Source: Octopus sinensis
Lineage: Eukaryota
DNA: 64,000 bases
Assembly (NCBI RefSeq): GCF_006345805.1
Contig: NC_042997.1
Span: forward strand, 4,278,001-4,342,000
Direction of reading: 5' to 3'
A program made the position numbers and the translations under genes. Positions 6,401 through 57,453 of the stretch are shown here, in pieces (the stretch's first letter is position 1; each line of letters starts with the position of its first letter). The notes below the pieces were generated by a model. It was not told the DNA's origin and did no database searches. It saw only the letters and a program-made list of their open reading frames with translations.

Positions 6401-6758
6401 AGAAAAAGGTTTGAAAATGCAATTTAAACCATGTTTATTTACTTAACCGGTTTCACTCTTTGGTAAAAGATTGTCAAAAGTAACATTTAAGGAAACATTG
6501 ATTAATATGGGTTCAAAAAATGTTTTTAACATAATTGTCACATTGAATATTATGCATTCAAAACAGTTTTTTACATAATTGTCACATTGGATATTATGAA
6601 TTCAAAAATGTTTTTTTATACATAATTGTCACATTACATGTATAAATATAGTGTTTGGTAACAGAGAAGTTCAATAGTGTGATGAGAATATTTGGGAAAA
6701 TTTGGTAGAAAAGGATAAAACAAATATATTATTGGGAATTGGTTGCGTTAATTATTGG
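6395..6758 (-). repeat. Left arm of ~365-bp inverted repeat (partner 10392-10757), with internal ~45-bp subrepeats
   Basis: Direct reverse-complement match with few substitutions. Internal unit CATAATTGTCACATTGRATATTATGMATTCAAAA occurs about 2.5 times. Confidence 0.95.
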
Positions 6759-6761
6759 AAC

Positions 6762-8737
6762 TTCCCTTATGGTGAACTCCCACAACCTAAACTCAAACCC
6801 AACACCACTAAAGGAGAATGGGAAATCATCCATACGCTACGAGACAATCATGACGTCACAATAAAGGAAGCTGATAAGGGTAGTACGGTCGTTGTTATGA
6901 ATACTGAGCAATATGAAAACTCTGTATCTCTCCTTTTAGAGGATACCACATACTATGAAAGAGTAGTCGACTACCAGCAATCCAAAACAATGACCAAACT
7001 GAAGGCACTCATTTACCAACACCGGAATGACTTCACAGCAAAGGAATGCGACTACATTACTAAATTTAATTGCAAAACCAGCACACTCTATGGGCTTCCA
7101 AAAATACACAAGAGTCAAATTATCACAGAAGCTTGCAAAAAGTCCACTTCAACCTGCATCACTATACCACATCCCACTGATCTCAAACTGAGACCAATAG
7201 TGGCAGGCCCAAATTGTGAAACACACAGACTTAGCAACTTTATAGATATCATCTTAAAGCCAATACTGAAACACATTCCAAGTATTGTAAGAGATGACCT
7301 GGACCTATTAAACCATCTCCCCAAACATGCCGATAAAGACACCTTAATCGTTTCTTTTGATGTTATTAATCTTTACACCACAATCCCACATGAATATGGA
7401 CTGGAAGCCATTAAATTCTGGCTGGATAAATATCCCAATGAGATCCCGGAAAGAATTTAAAAAGAATTCATAATTGAGGGCCTCAAATTTATTCTGCAAA
7501 ACAACTTCATGTATTTCCACAACAACACTTACAGACAGGTCTCAGGAACTGCAATGGGTACGAAAGTTGCACCTACCTATGCAAACCTGGTGATGGCCTA
7601 CCTGGAATCACATATCTATGAAAAATCCAAATATAAGTACGGCCAGTCTTTCCACAAATACCTGTTGGAGAACTGGAAACGCTACTTAGATGATTGCCTC
7701 ATCCTATGGTCCCACACACTCGACCAACTTATAGACTTCAAAAACCTTATCAACAGTGTAAATAACAACATTCAATTCACAATGGAATATAGTCAGGACC
7801 AACTCCCTTTTCTTGACATCCTAATCATTAAAAAAGGCGTCAACATTGAAACTGACATCCGTTACAAACCCACTGACTCTAAACAATACCTTCTATTCAC
7901 CTCCAATCACCCAAAACACACAAAGACAAATATCCCCTTCAACCTAGCGAGAAGAATCTGCACTATTGTCTCAAATGACACAACACGAAATAGAAGACTC
8001 CGGGAACTAAGGGCAATTCTTCTCGAAAGACATTACCCGGCATCACTAGTAGACAACGGAATAGAACGGGCCAAATCAATCAACATTCAGACCTTCGAAA
8101 ACCCAAACACATCCACAGTACAGTAAATAGCCTCCCCTATCTCTCAACACACAACCCTAGGAATGCAGAAGCTTACACTATTATATACAACAACATTCCA
8201 CAACTAAATCAAGACCCACGCCTGAAAAAAATACTGGCAGCTCATAAAATAATAAAAAGTAAGAGACAACCTAAATCCCTAAAAAACCTCCTCACCAACG
8301 CAAAATTACACAACACAAACCCACCGCCCACCATCAAAATATGTGGTCGCCCCAACTGCAAGACCTGCATCCACCTCATTGAGGGATCGTCGTACAAGTT
8401 CCACTCGGGACACACATTCATCATAAAAAATAATTTCACGTGCGCATCAAAAAATTTACTCTACGTCATAAGGTGTGAAGGATGCCACGAAGACTACATA
8501 GGGCAAACGAGCCTTACCCTCAGAGAAAGAATGACAGTTCACCGACAACAACTGAGGGACCCCTCCACAAGACAAATACCACTAAGTGGACACTTAGACC
8601 TTTGTGCACACAATAAGTCCCCCAAATTCTTAGTCTTCCCACTATACCAATGCTCGGACAACACCACAGACCAAACACGAATAAATAAGGAAAGTAATCT
8701 TATTCAAGAATACAGACCACAACTAAACATACTCTAA
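6762..8737 (+). pseudogene. PLE reverse transcriptase + GIY-YIG endonuclease ORF, disrupted by one stop and one 1-bp deletion
   Basis: Motifs TIKEADKG, RPIVAG, SFDVINLYTTIP, GTAMGTKVAPTYANL, KRYLDDC and LPFLD. In-frame TAA at 7458-7460 and a -1 shift near 8092. The frame then continues through CGRPNCKTC and NLLYVIRCEGCHEDYIGQT to RPQLNIL*. The Cys-rich linker is Neptune-like. Confidence 0.92.
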
Positions 8738-10391: not shown

Positions 10392-10757
10392 CCAATAATT
10401 AACGCAACCAATTCCCAATAATATATTTGTTTTATCCTTTTCTGCCAAATTTTCCCAAATATTCTCATCACACTATTGAACTTCTCTGTTACCAAACACT
10501 ATATTTATATATGTAACGTGACAATTATGTATAAAAAAAACATTTTTGAATTCATAATATCCAATGTGACAATTATGTAAAAAACTGTTTTGAATGCATA
10601 ATATTCAATGTGACAATTACGTAAAAAACTTTTTTTGAACCCATATTATTCAATGTTTCCTTAAATGTTACTTTTGACAATCTTTTACCAAAGAGTGAAA
10701 CCGGTTAAGTAAATAAACATCGTTTAAATTGCATTTTCAAACCTTTTTTCTTATATA
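10392..10757 (+). repeat. Right arm of ~365-bp inverted repeat (PLE 3' end)
   Basis: Reverse complement of 6395-6758. Confidence 0.95.
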
Positions 10758-16589: not shown

Positions 16590-19500
16590 TAATAATAATA
16601 ATAATAACAATAATAACAATAGTAATAATAATAATATTTCGCCTCTGAGCTAGCAGAATTGAAAGCGTACGAGACGACATGACCAGCCGGATTTTGTCTG
16701 TCTTCAACTTCTAAGTTGAATATAATAATTTTCGTGCTGATATAATTAGGAAAAGTCAGGCATTATATGCTCGATATGAAAGATTAACCCACTCCTAGCA
16801 TTATTATTATGAGCTATAACACCAGCAGCATGATTTTTGTTGGTTTTATCATTGGTGTAGATATGTTTGGAATAGTAGAAGCAATTTAAATATTGAGTGA
16901 AATGTAGGCGTTGAATTGAAAATAGATTCTTTGAGAGGAGTGAATTACGATAAAATGAAAATGAAAAGCGCCATCAGTGGAGTGTTTTGTAGTATGAACA
17001 CATGACAAATAAAATTGGAAGTAAAAACAGAGATGTGAAGAACAATGACATAAAATCTAGATTTATAGAGTGAATTAATAAAAAAGTAAGGGATGCAAAA
17101 TCTGGTTTCTATCAAAAGAAAATTGCGATCAAGGGAAAGAAACTAGGAGAACGAGTGAAGCGGAAAATTAGAATTATTGAGAAAGATTTATGAGACGCAA
17201 TGATGAAAGCAGTTACATTTAAATAGAAGTCATAATGAATTATTTAGAAAGGATTCCAAACATTAAGACTACATACACCCCCAACACACACGCGTGCACA
17301 TATATTTATACACGTATAGATATACGCAAACACACCCACACTTACACACACACCCACATATATACGTATATGAATAACCAAATATATTCATCAGATGTAT
17401 GGCCCGTGATGTTGGATCTCAATTTCAAAACAAGTATTAAATGAATAGCATCATACACTAAACTACTAAAACAAGCTTCAAATTTGCATTGCAAATTCAT
17501 TACAATCAAAATCGCTTTGTGTCGAATATCATTGGTACTTGCAATCCTACATGAATGGATGTCTGGGTTGTTAGAGAAAGAAAATCATGTACTAAAACAA
17601 CCAAGAAAATGTACCATATGATTTTCAGCGAAAATAATATGCCTCGCGAAAAATAAACATAAATTAACGAGCACACTGTCGTCATCATAACATCCTTGCA
17701 CGTACTTATTGTTCCTGCTGCTTGTTTTGTTGCTTTTTAACTCCAAATTTTATATCCGTGAGCATATAGCAAACGTGCATAACCTTGGAAACTGTATTTG
17801 GTTTGAAAGCGACGACTCCTTTTTCCGTTTGATCAGCCTCTAAAAATGTGCAAAGTAGCACTTTGATTTAGACGATTATGCTTATTGGCGTTAGCAAGAT
17901 GTAATGTACAAAGGATAATATTTGGAGGCATAATCTTGATGTAGCTGTAATATATTTCATAAAATTTCTGATTCACTATGTCTATGACCAATGCTGTTGC
18001 CTGCTGTAATCATACACCCATTAAATTTATGTAATGCATCTAAAGAATTGCTTTCAATGCGACCTTCTACCGAGAGGGCACTTCTACGGTCTGAATTTTG
18101 GTTTCAATTTCTAGCAGATGAGATATATTTTGATATTTTTCATCTACGACATACTAATAACTCTCCGACAAATTTCGTCAAGTTCTACATTGTTTCTCAT
18201 TTGTCTGAGCCTTGCGGCACACATTTTACTCTTCCTTTGCAAGATGGAAATCTGCAAGACCGTAGATACATATAGTCTATATATCGGTGTTTTGTCTTGC
18301 GGCACAAGGATGTCTACACATCACCACAACTATTTTGTATGATCCGGTCAATTTTGTATTGTCTTAATAAGACAAAGCGTCCTCTGTAAAAGATTTCACA
18401 GTTTTTCTTTTCATCATCACCAGGGAACGTGTAGACGTTCCATTGTTTACACGATGTTTGGTTTCTTCGTTGTCAAGACACATGGTCTTCAATTTACTTA
18501 TTTAACCTAATGTACGTAAGAACGTTCTCAATATTCTCAATGCAGCAACATTTTTCTAAGTGAGTCAATGAAGCTCTTCAATACACTTAATTTTTTACAA
18601 ATGTATGAAGGAAATTTTTTTACAAGAATGGGGTTACTTCGCTCCAACCGATTGAGCAGGAAGTCATACTAAACGCCAAGACATATTATCTCAGATTAAA
18701 TCAAAAATAACTCATAAGATCAATTTGTGACAGTATAAACATATATTAAATTAATACTAGTAAATTTCTGGAGATGGTAACCAGCGTAAAAACATCGTTT
18801 GAGGAAAATGAAAAAAAAAACTCAGATAAGAATAAAGTTTGTCAAAACATAGGGACAATCTCTATGTGTAGCATGATACATTTCTGTAATTCTGAACGAA
18901 AGCAACATCAAATTGCTGTATGATTGAAAATCGACGTTGCGTTCAAACATATTGTAATATATTTGGTAATACCTAATGCATAAAAAACTGTTTAATGATA
19001 TGTGAAAGATTGTGGAAAAAGTGTGAATATCATGTACGTCGCTCAATTTGCACAGGTATGACTAAAGGGTTAGCACTTATTGAGGAGAATATGAAAACCA
19101 TTGAACTAAACGATGCAAAGTAGGGTACTAAGATACTGCCACTTAAACGTCTAATGAGTTTCGGTAACCTATTTCCACCCCGGTTCCATACGGTGATAAA
19201 AATGATCAACTAAGTAGAACACATCCCCTCTAATTGTAATTTTATCCGAACTTAACTCAGCATCAAGTTTGCTGTGTACGTATGTGACTACAATAAGGGT
19301 AATATACAATTTCAGATATATATATATAAAAGACTGCTATTTCATTTTTCTACAAAAATATGTCTACACCGACAACAGTATTTGTAACTCACGCATAACA
19401 AAAAAGAAGAAAAATAATGAAATCAGTCTTCGATTAATTATGGACGCTTTTCTGGATCAGAATCAGAAGTTGCTTGACCACGTAACAAAAATTTTAGAAA

Positions 19501-19857
19501 TAGTAGCCAAAAGACTGCTACTTCTTTTCTAAAGGTTTCTTTATGTGGTCAAGCAACTTGTTGCTAAACACGTATTGCTAGCTATTGTGTATCTAGTACA
19601 CTCTTCGCCTTGAATGTAATGATATATGTATAATATATGGCGTGTACTGGTACACCGGCGATTATAATTAATTTTATTGTATCGCATTTATCTTGTTTAT
19701 ATTCTCTCGATAAATTTCTGACCGTTAGACGATATACCACAATCCCCTATTTTGTCGGGTTGTTCGGAGTCTGCGCAGTGTTTTGAATAGTTTAGAAAGA
19801 GCATTTCGATAGACGCACATGGATCTATTGGTATGGTCTTTCCATCGTTAACAGGAA

Positions 19858-19929
19858 TCTTACTGAAGAGCAGCCTGAGTAAATAAATACTATTTTTATT
19901 ACTGAATTTGGCGAAACTGCAGTATAAGA
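19858..19929 (+). ncRNA. Type I hammerhead ribozyme, unit 1 (stem II has a 1-nt deletion)
   Basis: TCTTA-CTGAAGA-GCAG...TGGC-GAAAC-TGCA-GTA-TAAGA. Predicted cleavage after A19924. Confidence 0.75.
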
Positions 19930-20260
19930 AAAGTTAAGTTTGTAAAAGTTTTTAATTCTCATCTCACTAAATTTATCCAGCTATTGTGTATCTAGTACAC
20001 TCTTCGCCTTGAATGTAATGATATATGTATAATATATGGCGTGTACTGGTACACCGGCGATTATAATTAATTTTATTGTATCGCATTTATCTTTGTTTAC
20101 ATATTCTCTCGATAAATTTCTGACCGTTAGACGATATACCACAATCCCCTATTTTGTCGGTTTTGTTCGGAGTCTGCGCAGTGTTTTGAATAGTTTAGAA
20201 AGAGCATTTCGATAGACGCACATGGATCTATTGGTATGGTCTTTCCATCGTTAACAGGAA

Positions 20261-20333
20261 TCTTACTGAAGAGCCAGCCTGAGTAAATAAATACATTTTT
20301 TATTACTGAATTTGGCGAAACTGCAGTATAAGA
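20261..20333 (+). ncRNA. Type I hammerhead ribozyme, unit 2
   Basis: Stem I TCTTA/TAAGA, core CTGAAGA, stem II GCCAG/TTGGC with G10.1-C11.1, GAAA, stem III AC/GT with TGCA loop, triplet GUA. Cleavage after A20328. Confidence 0.9.
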
Positions 20334-20661
20334 AAAGTTAAGTTTGTAAAAGTTTTTAATTCTCATCTCACTAAATTTATCCAGCTATTGTGTATCTAGT
20401 ACACTCTTCGCCTTGAATGTAATGATATATGTATAATATATGGCGTGTACTGGTACACCGGCGATTATAATTAATTTTATTGTATCGCATTTATCTTTGT
20501 TTACATTCTCTCGATAAATTTCTGACCGTTAGACGATATACCACAATCCCCTATTTTGTCGGGTTTGTTCGGAGTCTGCGCAGTGTTTTGAATAGTTTAG
20601 AAAGATCATTTCGATAGACGCACATGGATCTATGGTATGGTCTTTCCATCGTTAACAGGAA

Positions 20662-20733
20662 TCTTACTGAAGAGCCAGCCTGAGTAAATAAATACTATTT
20701 TTATTACTGAATTGGCGAAACTGCAGTATAAGA
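20662..20733 (+). ncRNA. Type I hammerhead ribozyme, unit 3
   Basis: Same intact motif. Cleavage after A20728. Confidence 0.9.
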
Positions 20734-21058
20734 AAAGTTAAGTTGTAAAAGTTTTTAATTCTCATCTCACTAAATTTATCCAGCTATTGTGTATCTAGTA
20801 CACTCTTCGCCTTGAATGTAATGAATATGTATAATATATGGCGTGTACTGGTACACCGGCGATTATAATTAATTTTATTGTATCGCTTATCTTTGTTTAC
20901 ATATTCTCTCGATAAATTTCTGACCGTTAGACGATATACCACAATCCCCTATTTTGTCGGGTTTGTTCGGAGTCTGCGCAGTGTTTTGAAGTTTAGAAAG
21001 ATCATTTCGATAGACGCACATGGATCTATTGGTATGGTCTTTCCATCGTTAACAGGAA

Positions 21059-21129
21059 TCTTACTGAAGAGCCAGCCTGGTAAATAATTACTATTTTTAT
21101 TACTGAATTGGCGAAACTGCAGTATAAGA
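21059..21129 (+). ncRNA. Type I hammerhead ribozyme, unit 4
   Basis: Same intact core and stems. Cleavage after A21124. Confidence 0.9.
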
Positions 21130-21299
21130 AAAGTTAAGTTGTAAAAGTTTTTAATTCTCATCTCACTAAATTTATCCAGCTATTGTGTCTATCTAGTACA
21201 CTCTTCGCCTTGAATGTAATGATATATGTATAATATATGGCGTGTTACTGGTACACCGGCGATTATAATTAATTTTATTGTATCGCATTTATCTTTGTT

Positions 21300-21331
<32 letters not shown>

Positions 21332-21411
21332 ATATATAATATATATGCATAGATAGATAGAGAGATAGCTAGATAGCTAGCTAGCTAGATACATAGATAG
21401 ATAGATACAAA

Positions 21412-21605
21412 TGTGACAATTCGGAAGCCATTATAAAACTCCGAGTTTCGGATGTCGGGGCGGACCCCACGCCGGCATCTCTTCTGTAATCGGGCCATCG
21501 AGAAAAATGTTTTAATGATCTGATAACTGTAGAGATAGCGGCGTGGGTTTCCGCCCCGAGATCTGAAACTCGGAGATTTAACATAGCTACCGAATAATTG
21601 ATCAC
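21412..21605. mobile_element. MITE-like element with imperfect ~65-bp TIRs
   Basis: CTCCGAGTTTCGGATGTCGGGGCGGACCCCACGCCG is inverted against CGGCGTGGGTTTCCGCCCCGAGATCTGAAACTCGGAG. Outer ends TGTGA...TCACA. Confidence 0.65.
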
Positions 21606-21688
21606 ATATATTTACAAATAAATACCTCTCAGTACATAATATCGAGGTGTCCTTCATTCTTTCGTTGTCTCCCCATTTCTATCAATAT

Positions 21689-21721
<33 letters not shown>

Positions 21722-22769
21722 CAAATAGGTAGATAGATATGCATGTGTGTATATATATATATATATATAAAGATATACCTATACATATATATACATGCAT
21801 ATATATATAATATATACACACACGCGCACACACACACACGCGCACATATACACGCCCATATATATGTATATATATATATAATATATATATATATAAACGT
21901 AGATATGGTGGCTTATCATACACAGCTTTTGCGATTGTTAACAAAATTAATAGCGGTCACAAAAATGTCACATTGTATTAACCCCGCTTTTACTAATGAG
22001 TTAATCTAACTCAACCCACAAGCACACTGTCTTAAATGATTGACCAAAGGAGGTACGACCGAAGAATACATATCCTGATTGCAATTTACGATTTCATGTC
22101 GACCATATTAATCCTCATTAACGGCTCTGAACGGCTAGAGTTAAACACAACTACTGTCAGTCGCATGAGAAAAACCGTTGCAAATGTGTGTTGATTTCCA
22201 AAACGGTAAAATGTAAAGAACTGATTAAAAAGGAGTGGCTTATTAACAATCAGAAGCTAAATACAAAATCAGTAGCAGTCTGAAAAGTGACAGAGAATAT
22301 TAACTAGCAGCACCTTTGCTAAAGATAAGGCTTAAACTAACTCAAAAGCATAATGCACGGAGGGTTGAAATGCTCTACATATGAATCCAAAATCACAATC
22401 TAGCTTTGTACGATGGGGATTTCGCTCCCTGTTTCAGTCACTGAAGACAGTTTGTTTTGCGGTTCTGATATCATTTAACTCTTAGCTTTAGCTGAAGCAG
22501 TGTTACTGAATACTCTCTGTCCCTTTGGTGACCTTTATTCATTTTAGTAATAATTGCAAAATCTCTAATTGCTAATAAGACGCACATTCTAATACAAATG
22601 CATATATACATATATTTATATATACAGATGTCTATACATACACCCTCCACACACATATATCTTTAGCAGAGGCGATGATAGTGAATACACTCTGTCATTT
22701 GGTGATCTCCATTTATGTTGCTAATAATTGCATGTCTTTAATTGCTGATAAGCCGCACTTTCTAATATA

Positions 22770-23990: not shown

Positions 23991-24072
23991 GGTCCCGGGT
24001 GATTCGGGGTTAACCACAGTAAATAAGGTACTCAATACATAGCAGAGTAAAATTAATTTATTATATAGAAGG

Positions 24073-24123
24073 AGCTTCTACAGGACTAGAACTGTTTCAT
24101 TCAAGAGAAATCTTCAGGAAGCT
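24073..24123 (-). ncRNA. Type I hammerhead ribozyme (left arm)
   Basis: Exact reverse complement of 30039-30089. Confidence 0.85.
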
Positions 24124-24734
24124 AGTTAACAAGAATTGTATTGGCATTTATACATTTAGGCAGGTTTAAAGGGGTGTTGGTGTGGGAATATTTTGGGGGT
24201 AGGCATAGCGCAAAATATCATACTTGGGGGAGTGGTCAAGGTGTCAGTGTTAAATTAGATAGAAGAATAAATAAAAAAATAAAAAAATAAAAAAATAAAA
24301 AAAAAATCTATATATAAAAAAAATCTATATATAAAAAAAGGGGAATATAGTTTTAGGTAAATAAGGAGATTCTCACTTATACCTATGCACACATGTATAC
24401 ATACACACATACAAACATATATACATATACATACACACATACATACACACACATATATATACATATATATACACTTACACATACATATACATATTTACAC
24501 ATACACATATATGTATACATACACACACTCACATGCATACACGTATACACACATGTATATATACACACACGACCACACATACCTATACGCACAGAAAAAT
24601 ATATATACACTACACACACATACTCACATACACGCATACACACACATATCACACACACACATGCACACACAGCACACTAGTCCCTATATACACATATAAC
24701 ACATACACACACATATACACACACATACATACAT

Positions 24735-24792
<58 letters not shown>

Positions 24793-25360
24793 TATATATA
24801 TATATATATATATATACATATGTGTACCTATGCATACCTACACATACACACATATATACACATACAAATACAGACCCATTTCCTAATTTTAATTTTATTA
24901 TCTTCGTTTATTACTTTTGTTATTCTTGGCCGCTTGGTCACAAACATCTTGGCTATTACAGCCAGTCCATTTATCTGTCTATTGGAAACAAGCACTCATT
25001 CACTCACGCACACTCTTTAGCACGTACACTCACTCATTCGTACACTCATACACATACACGCACGCACGCGTTATATTCATACATACATACATCTACATAC
25101 ATTCACGTATATACACATACGTACGCGTACCTACAGATTCATATCTACACTTTAGAAGGCTAGTCTATATATATACACCAATAATAATAAATTACACACA
25201 CTACGCATAACACACACATATACATATGTATACACACATACACACATACATACATATACACATACACATACATACGTATACATACATACATACATACATC
25301 CATACATCCATACATACACACATTTATACACATACACACACCCACATACATACATATATA

Positions 25361-25409
<49 letters not shown>

Positions 25410-26723
25410 ATATATATATTCATACACACACATACATATACATACATACATATACAAATATACGCACACACATGCATACATACTCATATACTCATACACG
25501 CACATACACATGTACATGCGTACCCATACACACACACACACGCGCGTTTCAATATATACACGTAAGTACACACATGCGTAAAAGTATACATATATCTATG
25601 CTTACACATACACACACACACACGCGCCTCCTTATATTCATACTTACATGCATACTTAAAAAATAAGTAAATAGTAAAATATATATACGCGCAGTTATTC
25701 ATACTTGCATACTCAAAATAAATAATAAATATAAGTACATGTACGTGCAGTTACCTATTATATAGACGGATACATACATATAAACTTACACACAATATAT
25801 ATATATATATATCTATATATATATATATATTATATATATATATATATACATACTATATACACATAATATACACATACACATATACATACATATATATATA
25901 CACACACATATACACATATATATATATCACATACTTACACACATGTACGTATAAATACACACATAGATAACTCTACGTACCTACATAACATAAACACACG
26001 AGCGAACGCGTATATGTACATATACACATACACATACACACGCATATATATACATACATACATACACATACACACATGTATACACACACACATATACACA
26101 TATATATATACATACACATATATATACATATATATAATATATATACATATATATATACATATATATAATACTATAACATACACTATCATAACACATATAT
26201 ACATGTGTGCAAACATACATACATTCTCATACAAGCACACACACTTACATTTACATATATACACACACTTACACACATATATACATACACATATACACAC
26301 ATACATACATACGTATATGCATACATACACACACACACATATATATATATATACATACATACATACACATACACATACCCATACATATATATACACACAC
26401 ATATAGACACATGCACATACTTATATCTCTACATACTCGCATATACATATATATATATTATATATACATATACACACACATACATATACCTATATACATG
26501 TATATATATACACATACATATATATACACATCTACAATTTGTATCTACACTCACATACCTGCACATACACATAACTCTACATACCTACATATACATCGAC
26601 ATACTCGCGTACACTCATATATATACACATATACCTATACACACACACATACATATACATATACATATACATATATATAAATATACATATATAATACACA
26701 TATACACACACATACATTATATA

Positions 26724-41073: not shown

Positions 41074-42952
41074 GGTTAATATAGGGGGTAACAAATATCA
41101 GAAAATCAAAAAAAAAATGTGTGTAATAGGTGTAAAACAACTTCCTATGAACGAATATGAAAAAAAAAATTCGCGCACGCGAAAGGGGGGTGGGGGAGAG
41201 GCCTCGGAAAATTCACATCGGGAAGTTCCGAAAGCGTCTGAGGAGCTGACCCGGGCACCAAAACAAAAAAAAAATAGTGTAATATGTGTAAAACAACTTG
41301 CTCTAAACGAATATGACAAAAAAAAATGCGCTCTCGCGAAAGAGGGGTGGGGGAGAGGCCTCGGAATATTTATATCGGGAATTTCCGAAAGCGTCTGAAC
41401 CGGGCACAAAAACAAAAACAAAAACAGCGTAATAGGTGTAAAACAACTTGCTCTAAACGACTATCATGAAAAAAATGCGCGCTCGCGAAAGGGGGGTGGG
41501 GGAGAGGCTTCGGAAATTTCACATCTTCAGTCCACGGCCTTTAAACTAAGAAAAAATAGTGTAATTGGTGTAAAACTACTTGTTCTAAACGAGTATCAAG
41601 AACACACACTCACACATGAATCATAAACTCCGTATTTCGCAAAAAAAATAATAAAGAGAAGAAATTCTGGAAAAAGTGAAGAAATGTTGGATCTCCGCCA
41701 TGTGAATCAAAATACGTGTCAGAAACATCTTGAAATACTACAGAAATTATGTTACGAAAATGATAATGTATACATACCTCTTTGAGTGGTCCATCGATAA
41801 TGATGATAAAGAAATGAGTTGGATTTGAACTCAGAATATTGACTAACACAACTACATACTACAAGACTCAAAATATTCAGCCAAGTCACCACCCTTTAAC
41901 TAGCAATAATAATAACATCAATAACATAACAGCCAAAAGATTTATTTGTTCTGAAAATAACAATCATAGTAAATAAATATGTTCTTTAATATTCACATTC
42001 ATGTGCACAGTTAAACACACTTACATACAAACAGTCACGCATGCATAATACAGAACGGAACACATAAATGAAGGATGCATTACTTAGTATATATTACATC
42101 TAGAGAATTTTGATTAATAAGTCAAATATGCAAATTATAAAGATAATTAATTGCTTTACTAAACAGTGTTGTAAAGGTGAAAAAATAAATTTGGGAAAAA
42201 AATACACGCCAAAACTAATTAATAAAGGATAATTAGGGAAGGATTGACACAAAATAATTTTTTCTGTCTCTTTTTTTCTGATAAATGCATCTTAATAAGT
42301 GAGAAGAATTGCATATATCTGAACTATTTCAAAGAAAAGCATAAATTTAATGTTTAAAATAGCTTTAACCAAGGAATGAGATCCAACATTTCTTCACTTT
42401 TTCCAGAATTTCTTCTCTTTATTTTTTTTTTTTGCGAAATACGGAGTTTATGATTCATGTGTGAGTGTGTGTTCTTGATACTCGTTTAGAACAAGTAGTT
42501 TTACACCAATTACACTATTTTTTCTTAGTTTAAAGGCCGTGGACGAGCGCGCATTTTTTTCATGATAGTCGTTTAGAGCAAGTTGTTTTACACCTATTAC
42601 GCTGTTTTTGTTTTTGTTTTTGTGCCCGGTTCAGACGCTTTCGGAAATTCCCGATATAAATATTCCGAGGCCTCTCCCCCACCCCTCTTTCGCGAGAGCG
42701 CATTTTTTTTTGTCATATTCGTTTAGAGCAAGTTGTTTTACACATATTACACTATTTTTTTTTTGTTTTGGTGCCCGGGTCAGCTCCTCAGACGCTTTCG
42801 GAACTTCCCGATGTGAATTTTCCGAGGCCTCTCCCCCCCCCCTTTCGCGTGCGCGAATTTTTTTTTTCATATTCGTTCATAGGAAGTTGTTTTACACCTA
42901 TTACACACTTTTTTTTTTGATTTTCTGATATTTGTTACGCCCTATATTAACC
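41074..42952. mobile_element. Non-autonomous foldback DNA transposon with long modular TIRs and an 8-bp TSD (Merlin-like; superfamily uncertain)
   Basis: TIR arms 41074-41695 and 42378-42952 are near identical, with termini GGTTAATATAGGG/CCCTATATTAACC. Direct repeat CATTTTTC at 41066-41073 and 42953-42960. Internal ~150-bp subrepeats x3.5. Confidence 0.88.
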
Positions 42953-56128: not shown

Positions 56129-57453
56129 CTGCGGCCTAAATGATCAGAACGGCATTGTTTACGTCAGAAAAGTAAGTATAAGTTTTTATCAAAGTAGTTT
56201 TATATTCTATAATTTTCAATCACACTCTGAAATCTTCGACTGCATGAGGAATTTAAATTTTCAATTTCTTGCTGGGTGATCTTATTCCATTCTTCCTGAA
56301 GGGCATTCCATAATTGCTCAGTTGTTTTAGGATTTCTGGCTTTCGAACGTTCTGGGATTTGAGCAGGCCAATCCATAACAATAACATTTTCAGCCTTGAG
56401 GAAGTTGATGAACACCTTAGCCTTGTGACATGGGGCATTTTTCCTGCATGAATATGGGTGGCCGTTTAGTTGAATTTCTCAACACAGGCAAGACATGATC
56501 TTTTACAAGTTGTTTATAAACTCCTGCATTTACCTTTCCATGTAATCGCACCAAAGGGCCCACACCATCTCCAGATATCATCCCCCAAACAATGACACTA
56601 TCTCCACCGAATTTAACACTAGTCTTAAGGCATTTAGGCGACAATTTTTCACCTACTTTTCTACGAACGTACCTTTTCCCATTTGGGCCAAATAACATAA
56701 ACTTAAATTCATCACTGAAATGCACCGTTTGCCATTTTTCTTGAGACCACAACACATGTTCGGTTGCAAAGGTAAGAAGACACTTTTTATTCTTGGAGCT
56801 GATCAGTGGCTGCACTGCAGGTGCACTTGCTTGTAGGTCATGTTCAACTAAACGACGAGACAGAGTTTTTCGAGATAAAGTTTTCTGCAATACAATGCTC
56901 ATTTTCCGAGAAACAGCAGCAGCAGTTTTAAATCTGTCCTTTTTAACCAACTTTACCATAGCACGATCTTCTCTCTTGGTCGTTTTTCTTGGTCTACCTG
57001 TAAACACGAACCACAATCATTGTAGACCTTAAGAATACCGTGTACAACACTTTTTGACTTGCAATAGATCCAATACTTAAATTTTCCTTCCTTCGAAGCT
57101 TAATAATCTGCTGACGAATTGGTAACGGAGTAAGTGGCATTATATTAACAAAGTACACTGCAAATATTCTTACTAATGTTTAGTAAACGACTCGTCACGT
57201 AAACAAATTCAAAACATTAGAGTTCGCCGGTTGAATATACTAAAACACGGATTAAAAGCATCCGTTCTGATCATTTTGGCCGCCATGGGTTTTGCAATAA
57301 ATCACTAAACTTTTATTTTATCCTCTCAAATTACACCAAAATCTCAGGCAATAGCAAATACTATCGTATTTATTGTCTGTGAAAATTATAGAATATAAAA
57401 CAGCTTTGCTAAAAAATTATATCTACTTTTCTGACGAAAACAATGCCGTTCTG
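56126..57453 (-). mobile_element. Tc1-family DNA transposon, IR/DR type, with a defective transposase
   Basis: ATG at 57140 (MPLTPLPIRQQII), GRPRKTT, HFSDEFKF, VWGMIS and MQE-NAPCH (DDE domain). Frameshifts; SPDLNPIE and the C-terminus are deleted. Terminal repeat CAGCTGCGGCCTAAATGATCAGAACGG at 56126 follows TA. An inverted inner DR lies at 57262-57288 and an outer TIR match at 57375-57453. Confidence 0.9.

What the first reader, a model, noticed from the sequence alone, without database searches (positions are those of the whole stretch)
19580..21300. Ribozyme-punctuated tandem array: candidate cephalopod non-LTR retrozyme / viroid-like circRNA locus
Seen: every ~400-bp unit carries a type I hammerhead core on the plus strand (CUGAAGA, G-C-closed stem II, GAAA, GUA triplet, 5-bp stem I UCUUA/UAAGA); only unit 1 has a 1-nt stem II deletion. 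Cleavage sites at 19924, 20328, 20728 and 21124 would release 404-, 400- and 396-nt monomers. The unit has no conserved ORF and is rich in local hairpins (GTGTAC-TG-GTACAC; CGAT..ATCG). Established: tandem non-coding repeats of a few hundred nt with one type I HHR each define metazoan non-LTR retrozymes, which yield small circular RNAs and are thought to be copied by another element's RT. Inference: this is a recently integrated multimer of such an RNA. I cannot verify whether this family has been described.
Basis: partly seen in the sequence, partly recalled or inferred. Interest (0 to 1): 0.92.

Follow-up and report, generated by a model that had tools for sequence, protein, structure and literature searches.

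The report
Hammerhead-ribozyme tandem repeat (animal retrozyme)
A 1.7-kb run of four-and-a-bit copies of a 400-base non-coding unit, each carrying a self-cutting hammerhead RNA motif, fits by sequence the known class of animal "retrozymes", which are cut into unit-length RNAs and closed into small circles; it looks like a new example of that class, not a new kind of element.

Summary
TRF finds one array at 19580-21306 (period 404, 4.3 copies, 97% match). Four phased type I hammerhead motifs on the + strand would cut after 19924, 20328, 20728 and 21124, giving 404-, 400- and 396-nt monomers. The motif is not chance: my helix-plus-core descriptor hits only these sites in 128 kb of both strands, against 0.01 hits per shuffled window. 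Rfam Hammerhead_1 aligns full length but below threshold (18.6-21.2 bits, cut-off 34) because loop 2 carries a 36-41 nt insert.

New details:
- Helix I continues beyond an internal loop.
- Helix III is an 8-nt palindrome (ACUGCAGU). In a two-unit transcript the two copies are predicted to pair with each other (P 0.67), the double-hammerhead arrangement of newt and Penelope-type ribozymes.
- The array ends lie inside the unit, not at the cleavage site, and the 3' end runs into (TA)n.
- A decayed Penelope-like element lies 11 kb upstream.

Every sequence-level criterion of a metazoan non-LTR retrozyme is met except the circle's self-pairing, which was inconclusive. Self-cleavage, circular RNA and other genomic copies could not be tested, and no relative was found in any reachable collection. 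"Cephalopod" is unverified (mollusc-like transposons). Verdict: new member of a known kind, moderate interest.

The parts
19580..21306 (+). Whole tandem array: 4 full or near-full units plus a 182-nt partial unit; 34% G+C, the same as the flanks
   Evidence: TRF; BLAST; alignment; composition
19580..19924 (+). 5'-truncated unit 0 (starts at unit position 55), ending at the first cleavage site
19925..20328 (+). Predicted monomer 1, 404 nt, cleavage site to cleavage site
20329..20728 (+). Predicted monomer 2, 400 nt
20729..21124 (+). Predicted monomer 3, 396 nt
21125..21306 (+). 3' partial unit (unit positions 1 to ~181); its end ...TTTGTTTA(C>T)ATAT merges into the (TA)n tract
19848..19937 (+). 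Hammerhead copy 1 (cleavage after 19924). A 1-nt deletion leaves a 2-bp proximal helix II. Rfam HH1 18.6 bits
20251..20341 (+). Hammerhead copy 2 (cleavage after 20328). Distal helix I UUAAC/GUUAA; internal loop AGGAA/AAA; proximal helix I UCUUA/UAAGA; core CUGAAGA; helix II GCCAG/UUGGC plus a long arm; GAAA; helix III A-U and C-G with UGCA loop; GUA. Rfam HH1 21.2 bits
20652..20741 (+). Hammerhead copy 3 (cleavage after 20728)
21049..21137 (+). Hammerhead copy 4 (cleavage after 21124); two changes in the distal arm of helix II. Rfam HH1 21.2 bits
20320..20327 (+). ACUGCAGU, the 8-nt palindrome forming helix III (also at 19916-19923, 20720-20727, 21116-21123). Predicted to pair with the copy in the next unit
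21300..21346 (.). (TA)n microsatellite abutting the 3' end of the array; possible target of insertion
   Evidence: PLE preference for (TA)n from PMC8557442

Best explanation
The array is a genomic copy of a metazoan non-LTR retrozyme, a non-coding, non-autonomous retroelement made of ~400-bp units that each encode one type I hammerhead ribozyme in the + sense.

Proposed cycle. The anatomy in steps 2 and 5 is shown by the sequence; every step of the cycle itself is inferred from the published retrozyme model.
1. Read-through transcription gives a multimeric + strand RNA.
2. Helix III of a single ribozyme is only two base pairs, and a competing UACUG/CAGUA helix is predicted to be more stable. 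So hammerheads of neighbouring units pair through the ACUGCAGU palindrome into a double hammerhead. [quoted passage not shown]
3. An RtcB-type tRNA ligase closes the monomers into circles. In a circle the lone ribozyme is mostly in the inactive fold, which would protect the circle.
4. A reverse transcriptase supplied in trans, most likely from a Penelope-like element, copies the circle round and round.
5. The multimeric cDNA is inserted at a (TA)n tract. This would explain why the array begins and ends at arbitrary points of the unit, not at the cleavage site.
For: - Array of 4.3 units of ~400 bp.
- Complete hammerhead core CUGANGA / GAAAY / RUH with all three helices in every unit. It is found nowhere else in 128 kb, with 0.01 expected per shuffled window. 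The criteria are as stated in the supplement of PMC7229834.
- Full-length, sub-threshold alignment to Rfam Hammerhead_1.
- Helix I extends past an internal loop, as in canonical type I ribozymes.
- Helix III is an 8-nt palindrome. In a two-unit transcript the MFE and the ensemble (P 0.62-0.67) pair the two palindromes, against P 0.17-0.26 for the inactive helix.
- No coding capacity, and no protein homologues of the unit's ORFs.
- G+C is 34%, below the <50% stated for the class.
- No ribozyme on the minus strand.
- The array ends lie at unit positions 55 and ~181, and the 3' end abuts (TA)n with ACATAT/ATATAT overlap. PLEs prefer (TA)n.
- A canonical RT-then-GIY-YIG PLE remnant lies at 6744-8728.
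- Loci that encode relatives of this window's PLE RT and Tc1 transposase carry minimal PLE hammerheads with the same GAAAC-NNNN-GU palindromic helix III.
- The life-cycle model comes from PMC7229834 and PMC7761336.
Against: - No second copy of the family was found: not in the window, in JGI metagenomes or IMG/VR, or among 15 billion predicted proteins probed with two of the unit's ORFs. None of these collections is a proper search of the source genome.
- The Rfam score is below the curated threshold.
- As a monomer the active fold is ~6 kcal/mol less stable than an inactive one.
- The predicted circle is not more stable than shuffles (z -0.3 to -1.3). The experimentally validated mussel retrozyme scores only -1.1 in the same test.
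- Adjacency to (TA)n has a chance probability of about 0.055 in this microsatellite-rich window.
- The two-block variant pattern (A A B B) is not what a single rolling-circle copy of one circle gives.
- No target-site duplication is visible.
Confidence: 0.68

Rival explanations
1. A dead relic: one hammerhead-bearing unit of retrozyme or PLE origin was amplified in place by DNA-level processes (unequal crossing-over, replication slippage). It now behaves as an ordinary local minisatellite-like repeat with no RNA cycle.
For: - It is the only copy in 64 kb, and no relatives were found anywhere reachable.
- Neighbouring units share variants in an A A B B pattern at alignment columns 15, 283 and 390, typical of in-place duplication or conversion.
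- There are 13 indel events against 6 substitution columns, suggesting slippage.
- No target-site duplication is visible.
- The weak monomer fold is not the MFE.
Against: - All four ribozymes keep every invariant core nucleotide and the palindrome.
- 97% identity means the array is young.
- The class is defined by exactly such arrays, which are transcribed wherever they have been tested (PMC7229834).
- A DNA-level origin of this array does not exclude activity of the family.
Confidence: 0.2
2. Part of an autonomous Penelope-like element: a tandemly repeated pseudo-LTR or terminal region, not a separate non-autonomous family.
For: - PLE pseudo-LTRs carry type I hammerheads that act as dimers, and retrozymes are phylogenetically close to pLTRs (bioRxiv 10.64898/2026.07.22.740005).
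- A PLE remnant is in the window.
- PLE hammerheads in related loci share the helix III design, and one shares the CUGAAGAG core.
Against: - No RT or EN coding sequence adjoins the array. The PLE remnant is 11 kb away, shows no similarity to the unit and has no detectable hammerhead.
- PLE hammerheads are minimal (helix II of 2-3 bp with a 3-5 nt loop). This one has an extended helix I and a ~50-nt helix II arm.
Confidence: 0.06
3. An ordinary tandem repeat that contains a hammerhead-like string by chance.
For: - The Rfam score is below the gathering threshold, and its E-value rescaled to 64 kb is about 2.
- The four copies are one event.
- The bare two-part core string occurs by chance in metagenomes (15 hits).
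Against: - With helices required, 2e-4 of shuffled units and 0.01 hits per shuffled window match.
- None of the 15 chance core matches has helix I or II.
- Extra unselected features fit: the distal helix I, the 8-nt palindromic helix III, the unit size and the tandem context.
Confidence: 0.04
4. An integrated cDNA of an exogenous viroid-like or deltavirus-like circular RNA replicon.
For: The size (~400 nt), the hammerhead and the multimeric head-to-tail arrangement resemble rolling-circle intermediates.
Against: - A ribozyme is present in one polarity only.
- There is no ORF.
- The composition is identical to the host flanks.
- There is no match in viral contigs.
- The helix III design is that of animal genomic hammerheads.
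Confidence: 0.01

Closest known systems
Metazoan non-LTR retrozymes (Cervera & de la Pena 2020, PMC7229834), e.g. the Mytilus galloprovincialis 350-390-bp repeats
   Same: Tandem non-coding units of 150-450 bp. One type I hammerhead per unit. Low G+C. No LTR, PBS or PPT. Helix III of two base pairs with a palindromic tetraloop (mussel ACGCGCGU, here ACUGCAGU). Co-occurrence with PLEs. A comparably weak fold z-score (mussel -1.1).
   Different: No sequence similarity to the published coral, mussel or axolotl units. Helix II carries a 36-41 nt insert, so the Rfam model misses it at threshold. The core is CUGAAGA, not CUGAUGA. Copy number, expression and circularity are unknown here.
Newt satellite 2 / axolotl HHR_Amex hammerheads (dimeric type I ribozymes)
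   Same: Weak helix III closed by a palindromic loop. Predicted to need two ribozyme copies for an active fold. ~330-350-bp tandem units.
   Different: Those have a one-base-pair (Amex1) or two-base-pair (Amex2) helix III and conserved loop 1-loop 2 contacts. Here the loop contacts cannot be assigned, and helix II is much longer.
[quoted passage not shown] 2017, cited in PMC7761336)
   Same: Type I topology. GAAAC-NNNN-GU palindromic helix III. Act as dimers. Occur in tandem. Seen in loci that encode relatives of this window's PLE RT and Tc1 transposase (L018, L021).
   Different: Those lie in the terminal repeats of an RT/EN-coding element and have 3-bp helices I and minimal helix II. This one is in a coding-free 400-bp unit with an extended helix I and a long helix II.
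Rfam Hammerhead_1 (RF00163); 235 such loci were reported in the giant squid genome (PMC6962438)
   Same: Full-length alignment of core and helices.
   Different: Scores 18.6-21.2 bits against a 34-bit threshold. Routine Rfam annotation would not report it.

Membership tests
Metazoan non-LTR retrozyme | Tandem DNA repeats of about 150-450 bp, in two or more copies | tested here: met
   Period 404, 4.3 copies, 97% match
Metazoan non-LTR retrozyme | One type I hammerhead per unit with core CUGANGA / GAAAY / RUH and helices I-III | tested here: met
   Own descriptor finds four phased hits, with 0.01 expected per shuffled window. Copy 1 has a weakened helix II.
Metazoan non-LTR retrozyme | No LTR, PBS or PPT, and no protein-coding capacity | tested here: met
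   The array consists only of head-to-tail units. ORFs are <=79 aa, are not conserved between units and have no homologues.
Metazoan non-LTR retrozyme | G+C below 50% | tested here: met
   34-35%
Metazoan non-LTR retrozyme | Stable, highly self-paired predicted circular RNA | tested here: inconclusive
   z -0.3 to -1.3 and 60-62% paired. Published retrozymes in the same test: mussel -1.1, axolotl -1.5 and -3.4, coral -3.2, with 66-71% paired.
Metazoan non-LTR retrozyme | Multiple dispersed genomic copies (a mobile family) | not testable with these tools
   The source genome is not searchable. There is no second copy in the window and none in metagenome, viral or protein collections.
Metazoan non-LTR retrozyme | Expression as unit-length linear and circular RNA; self-cleavage in vitro | not testable with these tools
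   Needs RNA data or bench work.
Metazoan non-LTR retrozyme | Co-occurrence with Penelope-like elements in the same genome | tested here: met
   RT + GIY-YIG remnant at 6744-8728, 49-61% identical to the PLE ORFs (RT and GIY-YIG) called in L020
Rfam Hammerhead_1 (RF00163) | Score at or above the curated gathering threshold (34 bits) | tested here: not met
   18.6-21.2 bits with full-length alignment. The penalty comes from a 36-41 nt insert in loop 2.
PLE pseudo-LTR hammerhead | Located in terminal repeats flanking an RT/GIY-YIG ORF; minimal helices | tested here: not met
   No adjoining ORF. No similarity to the PLE remnant. Helix I and helix II are extended.
Viroid / viroid-like satellite RNA | RNA-only replicon, commonly with ribozymes in both polarities | tested here: not met
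   It is DNA-encoded in a host-like context, and the hammerhead is on the + strand only.

The most novel reading that the evidence does not exclude
This is a living retrozyme family from a mollusc, possibly cephalopod, lineage in which none has been described. Its hammerhead has an expanded helix II that hides it from Rfam-based annotation and works only as a double hammerhead between neighbouring units. This array would be a fresh rolling-circle cDNA insertion into a (TA)n tract made by a PLE, with a template switch between two circle variants recorded in its A A B B structure. If so, the locus would give a direct, datable footprint of the still-inferred integration step of animal retrozymes.
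Probability: 0.3. Interest if true: 0.5.

Novelty: new member of a known kind. Interest (0 to 1): 0.35.

Why it matters
Animal retrozymes are a recently recognised, abundant source of small circular RNAs. How they are reverse-transcribed and inserted is still only a model.

A young array may preserve the junctions of an insertion event. Here the ends lie inside the unit, the 3' end sits in a (TA)n tract (the preferred target of Penelope-like elements), and two variant blocks are visible. Comparison with other copies and with empty sites could then test the rolling-circle cDNA model.

The locus also shows a practical point. A complete hammerhead with a long helix II insert scores well below the Rfam threshold, so counts of type I hammerheads in mollusc genomes (for example 235 in the giant squid) may be underestimates.

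Beyond that, the finding is an expected member of a described class.

Tried and rejected
- Rfam at gathering threshold and at E<=10 over 2.1 kb gave no hammerhead. The match appeared only when 111-nt stretches were searched.
- Exact gapped patterns of the ribozyme in JGI metagenomes: the strict pattern gave 0 hits. The looser pattern gave 15 hits, all without helices I and II, so chance. IMG/VR gave 0.
- The unit's spurious ORFs were used as probes for other copies among predicted proteins. The 79-aa ORF had no candidate. The 69-aa ORF hit only unrelated repetitive proteins at 21-38% identity. The exact look-up of a 37-aa ORF found nothing.
- About 90 kb around PLE and Tc1 relatives was fetched (L001, L017-L021). 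It showed no similarity to the unit, only minimal PLE hammerheads.
- Comparison with the published coral, mussel and axolotl retrozyme sequences showed no homology.
- The circular-fold z-score proved uninformative as a class test, because a validated retrozyme scores no better.
- Host identification failed.
- I first read the many 1-nt indels between units as long-read assembly noise. I rejected that as a full explanation because three variants, two of them indels, are shared by neighbouring units. The private ones may still be noise, including the helix II deletion in copy 1.
- No tRNA-like sequence is found in the window, and no target-site duplication is visible at the array ends.

Full report
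**What is there**

Tandem Repeats Finder reports a single long-period array in the window: 19580-21306, period 404, 4.3 copies, 97% matches. BLAST of one unit against the whole window recovers five consecutive pieces of 345, 404, 400, 396 and about 180 nt at 97-98% identity. It finds no other copy in the 64 kb.

The string GAAACTGCAGTATAAGA occurs four times, in phase. G+C is 34-35%, indistinguishable from the flanks. The ORFs in the array are at most 79 aa and differ from unit to unit.

**Is the hammerhead real or chance?**

Each unit reads 5'-UCUUA CUGAAGA GCCAG...UUGGC GAAA C UGCA G UA | UAAGA-3'. This satisfies the catalytic-centre rule CUGANGA / GAAAY / RUH that the retrozyme authors use (supplement of PMC7229834).

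- A strict descriptor of my own (core plus helix I >=4, helix II >=3 and helix III >=2 bp) hits units 2-4.
- A relaxed descriptor hits all four units and nothing else on either strand of the window.
- Dinucleotide shuffles of the window give 0.01 hits each, and 2e-4 of shuffled units give a hit.
- As an outside control, the bare two-part core string found 15 places in JGI metagenomes. None of them has helix I or II.

Rfam gave nothing at its curated threshold, and nothing at E<=10 over 2.1 kb. When only 111 nt around a site are searched, Hammerhead_1 (RF00163) aligns over its whole length (positions 1-45). The scores are 21.2, 18.6 and 21.2 bits for copies 2, 1 and 4, against a threshold of 34. 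The loss comes from a 36-41 nt insert where the model expects 8-12.

That score alone would not be significant at window scale. Together with the descriptor statistics and the tandem context, I regard the motif as genuine. The four copies are one evolutionary event, not four independent observations.

- Helix I does not stop at 5 bp. After an internal loop (AGGAA on the 5' side, AAA on the 3' side) it continues with UUAAC/GUUAA. This is the interrupted helix I typical of canonical type I ribozymes.
- Helix II is GCCAG/UUGGC followed by an internal loop and a 9-bp A/U-rich arm.
- Helix III is only A-U and C-G closed by UGCA, so A15.1 to U16.1 reads ACUGCAGU, a perfect 8-nt palindrome.

For a single ribozyme the nearest-neighbour model prefers an inactive helix, UACUG/CAGUA, which ties up C3-G5. 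The active three-way junction is about 6 kcal/mol less stable. For a transcript spanning two ribozymes (20240-20750) the result is different:

| Pairing in the two-ribozyme transcript | Ensemble probability |
|---|---|
| Two palindromes with each other (20320-20327 with 20720-20727), also the minimum-energy fold | 0.62-0.67 |
| Inactive UACUG/CAGUA helix | 0.17-0.26 |

This is the double-hammerhead arrangement known from newt satellite and Penelope-type ribozymes (PMC7229834; PMC7761336). It is a prediction, not a measurement.

**Variation among the units**

The alignment shows 13 indel events against 6 substitution columns. Three variants are shared by neighbours: alignment columns 15, 283 and 390. 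They split the array into a left block of about 2.1 units and a right block of about 2.2 units.

So at least part of the variation is real, and the array is not a set of identical copies of one template. The private single-base indels may be assembly noise. These include the CC-to-C deletion that weakens helix II of copy 1.

**The ends of the array**

The array starts at unit position 55 and ends near position 181, not at the cleavage site. At the 3' end the unit's ...TTTGTTTACATAT becomes ...TTTGTTTATATAT and runs into a (TA)n tract at 21300-21346.

Penelope-like elements insert preferentially into (TA)n (PMC8557442). In this window, however, 5.5% of positions lie in or next to such a tract, so the hint is weak. 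No target-site duplication is visible. A shorter (TA) run at 19318-19330 lies 250 bp upstream. I cannot tell whether the intervening hairpin-containing segment arrived with the array.

**Context**

A decayed canonical Penelope-like element lies at 6744-8728 on the + strand. Its order is RT followed by a GIY-YIG endonuclease, and its reading frame is broken by shifts. It is 49-61% identical at the protein level to the PLE ORFs (RT and GIY-YIG) called in a public contig. It has no similarity to the unit and no detectable hammerhead.

Loci fetched around relatives of this window's PLE RT and Tc1 transposase contain minimal PLE hammerheads with the same helix III design:
- ACCCUGAUGAGCC...GAAACUAUAGU in L018.
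- GCCCUGAAGAGCUCAGCGAAACGCGUU in L021, as two copies 795 nt apart.

**Search for relatives**

- Metagenome and viral pattern scans found nothing real.
- Two of the unit's ORFs used as protein probes found nothing real.
- An exact ORF look-up found nothing.
- The published coral, mussel and axolotl retrozymes share no sequence with the unit.

None of these collections is the source genome. Copy number therefore remains unknown, and this is the main gap in the case.

**Host**

I could not confirm 'cephalopod'. The PLE RT's nearest named relatives are from Mytilus coruscus (71% over two thirds of the query), Argonauta hians (58%) and Haliotis rufescens (48%). A Tc1 remnant in the window is 93-97% identical in DNA to a contig assembled from run SRR9969997, and 86% identical to an ENA contig. 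A mollusc is likely; more cannot be said.

**Comparison with what is known**

Cervera and de la Pena (PMC7229834) define metazoan non-LTR retrozymes by these features:
- tandem repeats of 150-450 bp with one type I hammerhead each;
- G+C below 50%;
- no LTR, PBS or PPT;
- target-site duplications only sometimes present;
- expression as linear and circular RNA;
- co-occurrence with PLEs.

Every sequence-level criterion is met here except one. The predicted circle's stability is inconclusive (z -0.3 to -1.3). However, the experimentally validated mussel retrozyme gives only -1.1 in the same test.

A 2026 preprint argues that retrozymes derive from PLE pseudo-LTRs. I found no paper describing retrozymes in cephalopods. 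The giant squid genome paper lists 235 Rfam Hammerhead_1 loci without further analysis.

**Verdict**

The interpretation as a retrozyme-type locus is supported at the level of sequence anatomy. Its activity, circular RNA, recent integration and host remain untested.

It is a new member of a known kind. Two modest points of interest remain. The first is a helix II insert that hides the ribozyme from standard annotation. The second is array junctions that could inform the integration model if other copies are found. Interest 0.35.

Noticed in passing
window 6744-8728 (+), with 6451-6699 and 10451-10700: Decayed Penelope-like element: RT then GIY-YIG, with frameshifts. Its nearest named relatives are molluscan. 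It is bracketed by 250-bp inverted repeats (97% identical) that contain 44-nt tandem repeats. No hammerhead was found in it.
   Followed up: partly
window 19467-19559 (and 19328-19347 / 19509-19528): A 34-nt-arm hairpin lies directly upstream of the array and gives weak sub-threshold microRNA-precursor matches. A 20-nt direct repeat lies 181 nt apart. It is unclear whether this 250-bp segment between a short (TA) run and the array belongs to the insertion.
   Followed up: partly
window 21419-21595: Relatively G+C-rich inverted repeat (46-nt arms, 85-nt spacer) sitting between two (ATAG)n tracts at 21349-21407 and 21685-21739. It looks like a small foldback or MITE-like insertion into a microsatellite.
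   Followed up: no
window 24056-26671 versus 30106-27914: Large inverted duplication (86-89% identity, arms of at least 2.6 kb) made largely of ATAC/TA microsatellite sequence. It is either a real palindrome or a foldback artefact of assembly.
   Followed up: partly
window 41074-41600 versus 42952-42474: Inverted repeats of 527 bp at 91% identity, each built of 154-157-nt tandem units. Possibly the ends of a foldback-type element.
   Followed up: no
window ~56215-57451 (-): Tc1/mariner transposase remnant (HTH_Tnp_Tc3_2 domain). It is 93-97% identical in DNA to a Logan contig of run SRR9969997, and 81-86% identical to an ENA contig that carries many copies of the family.
   Followed up: partly
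L018 19919-19948 (+) and an inverted copy near 19676-19705 (minus strand); L021 8029-8006 and 7234-7211 (-): Minimal Penelope-type hammerheads in loci fetched around relatives of this window's Tc1 transposase (L018) and PLE RT (L021). They have 3-bp helix I, a short helix II, and a palindromic helix III (ACUAUAGU or ACGCGU). The two L021 copies are 795 nt apart in tandem.
   Followed up: partly
window 19580-21306: The array is split into two variant blocks. The left ~2.1 units have T at column 15, G at 283 and T at 390. The right ~2.2 units have a deletion at 15, T at 283 and a deletion at 390. This is compatible with a template switch between two circle variants or with in-place duplication.
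   Followed up: partly
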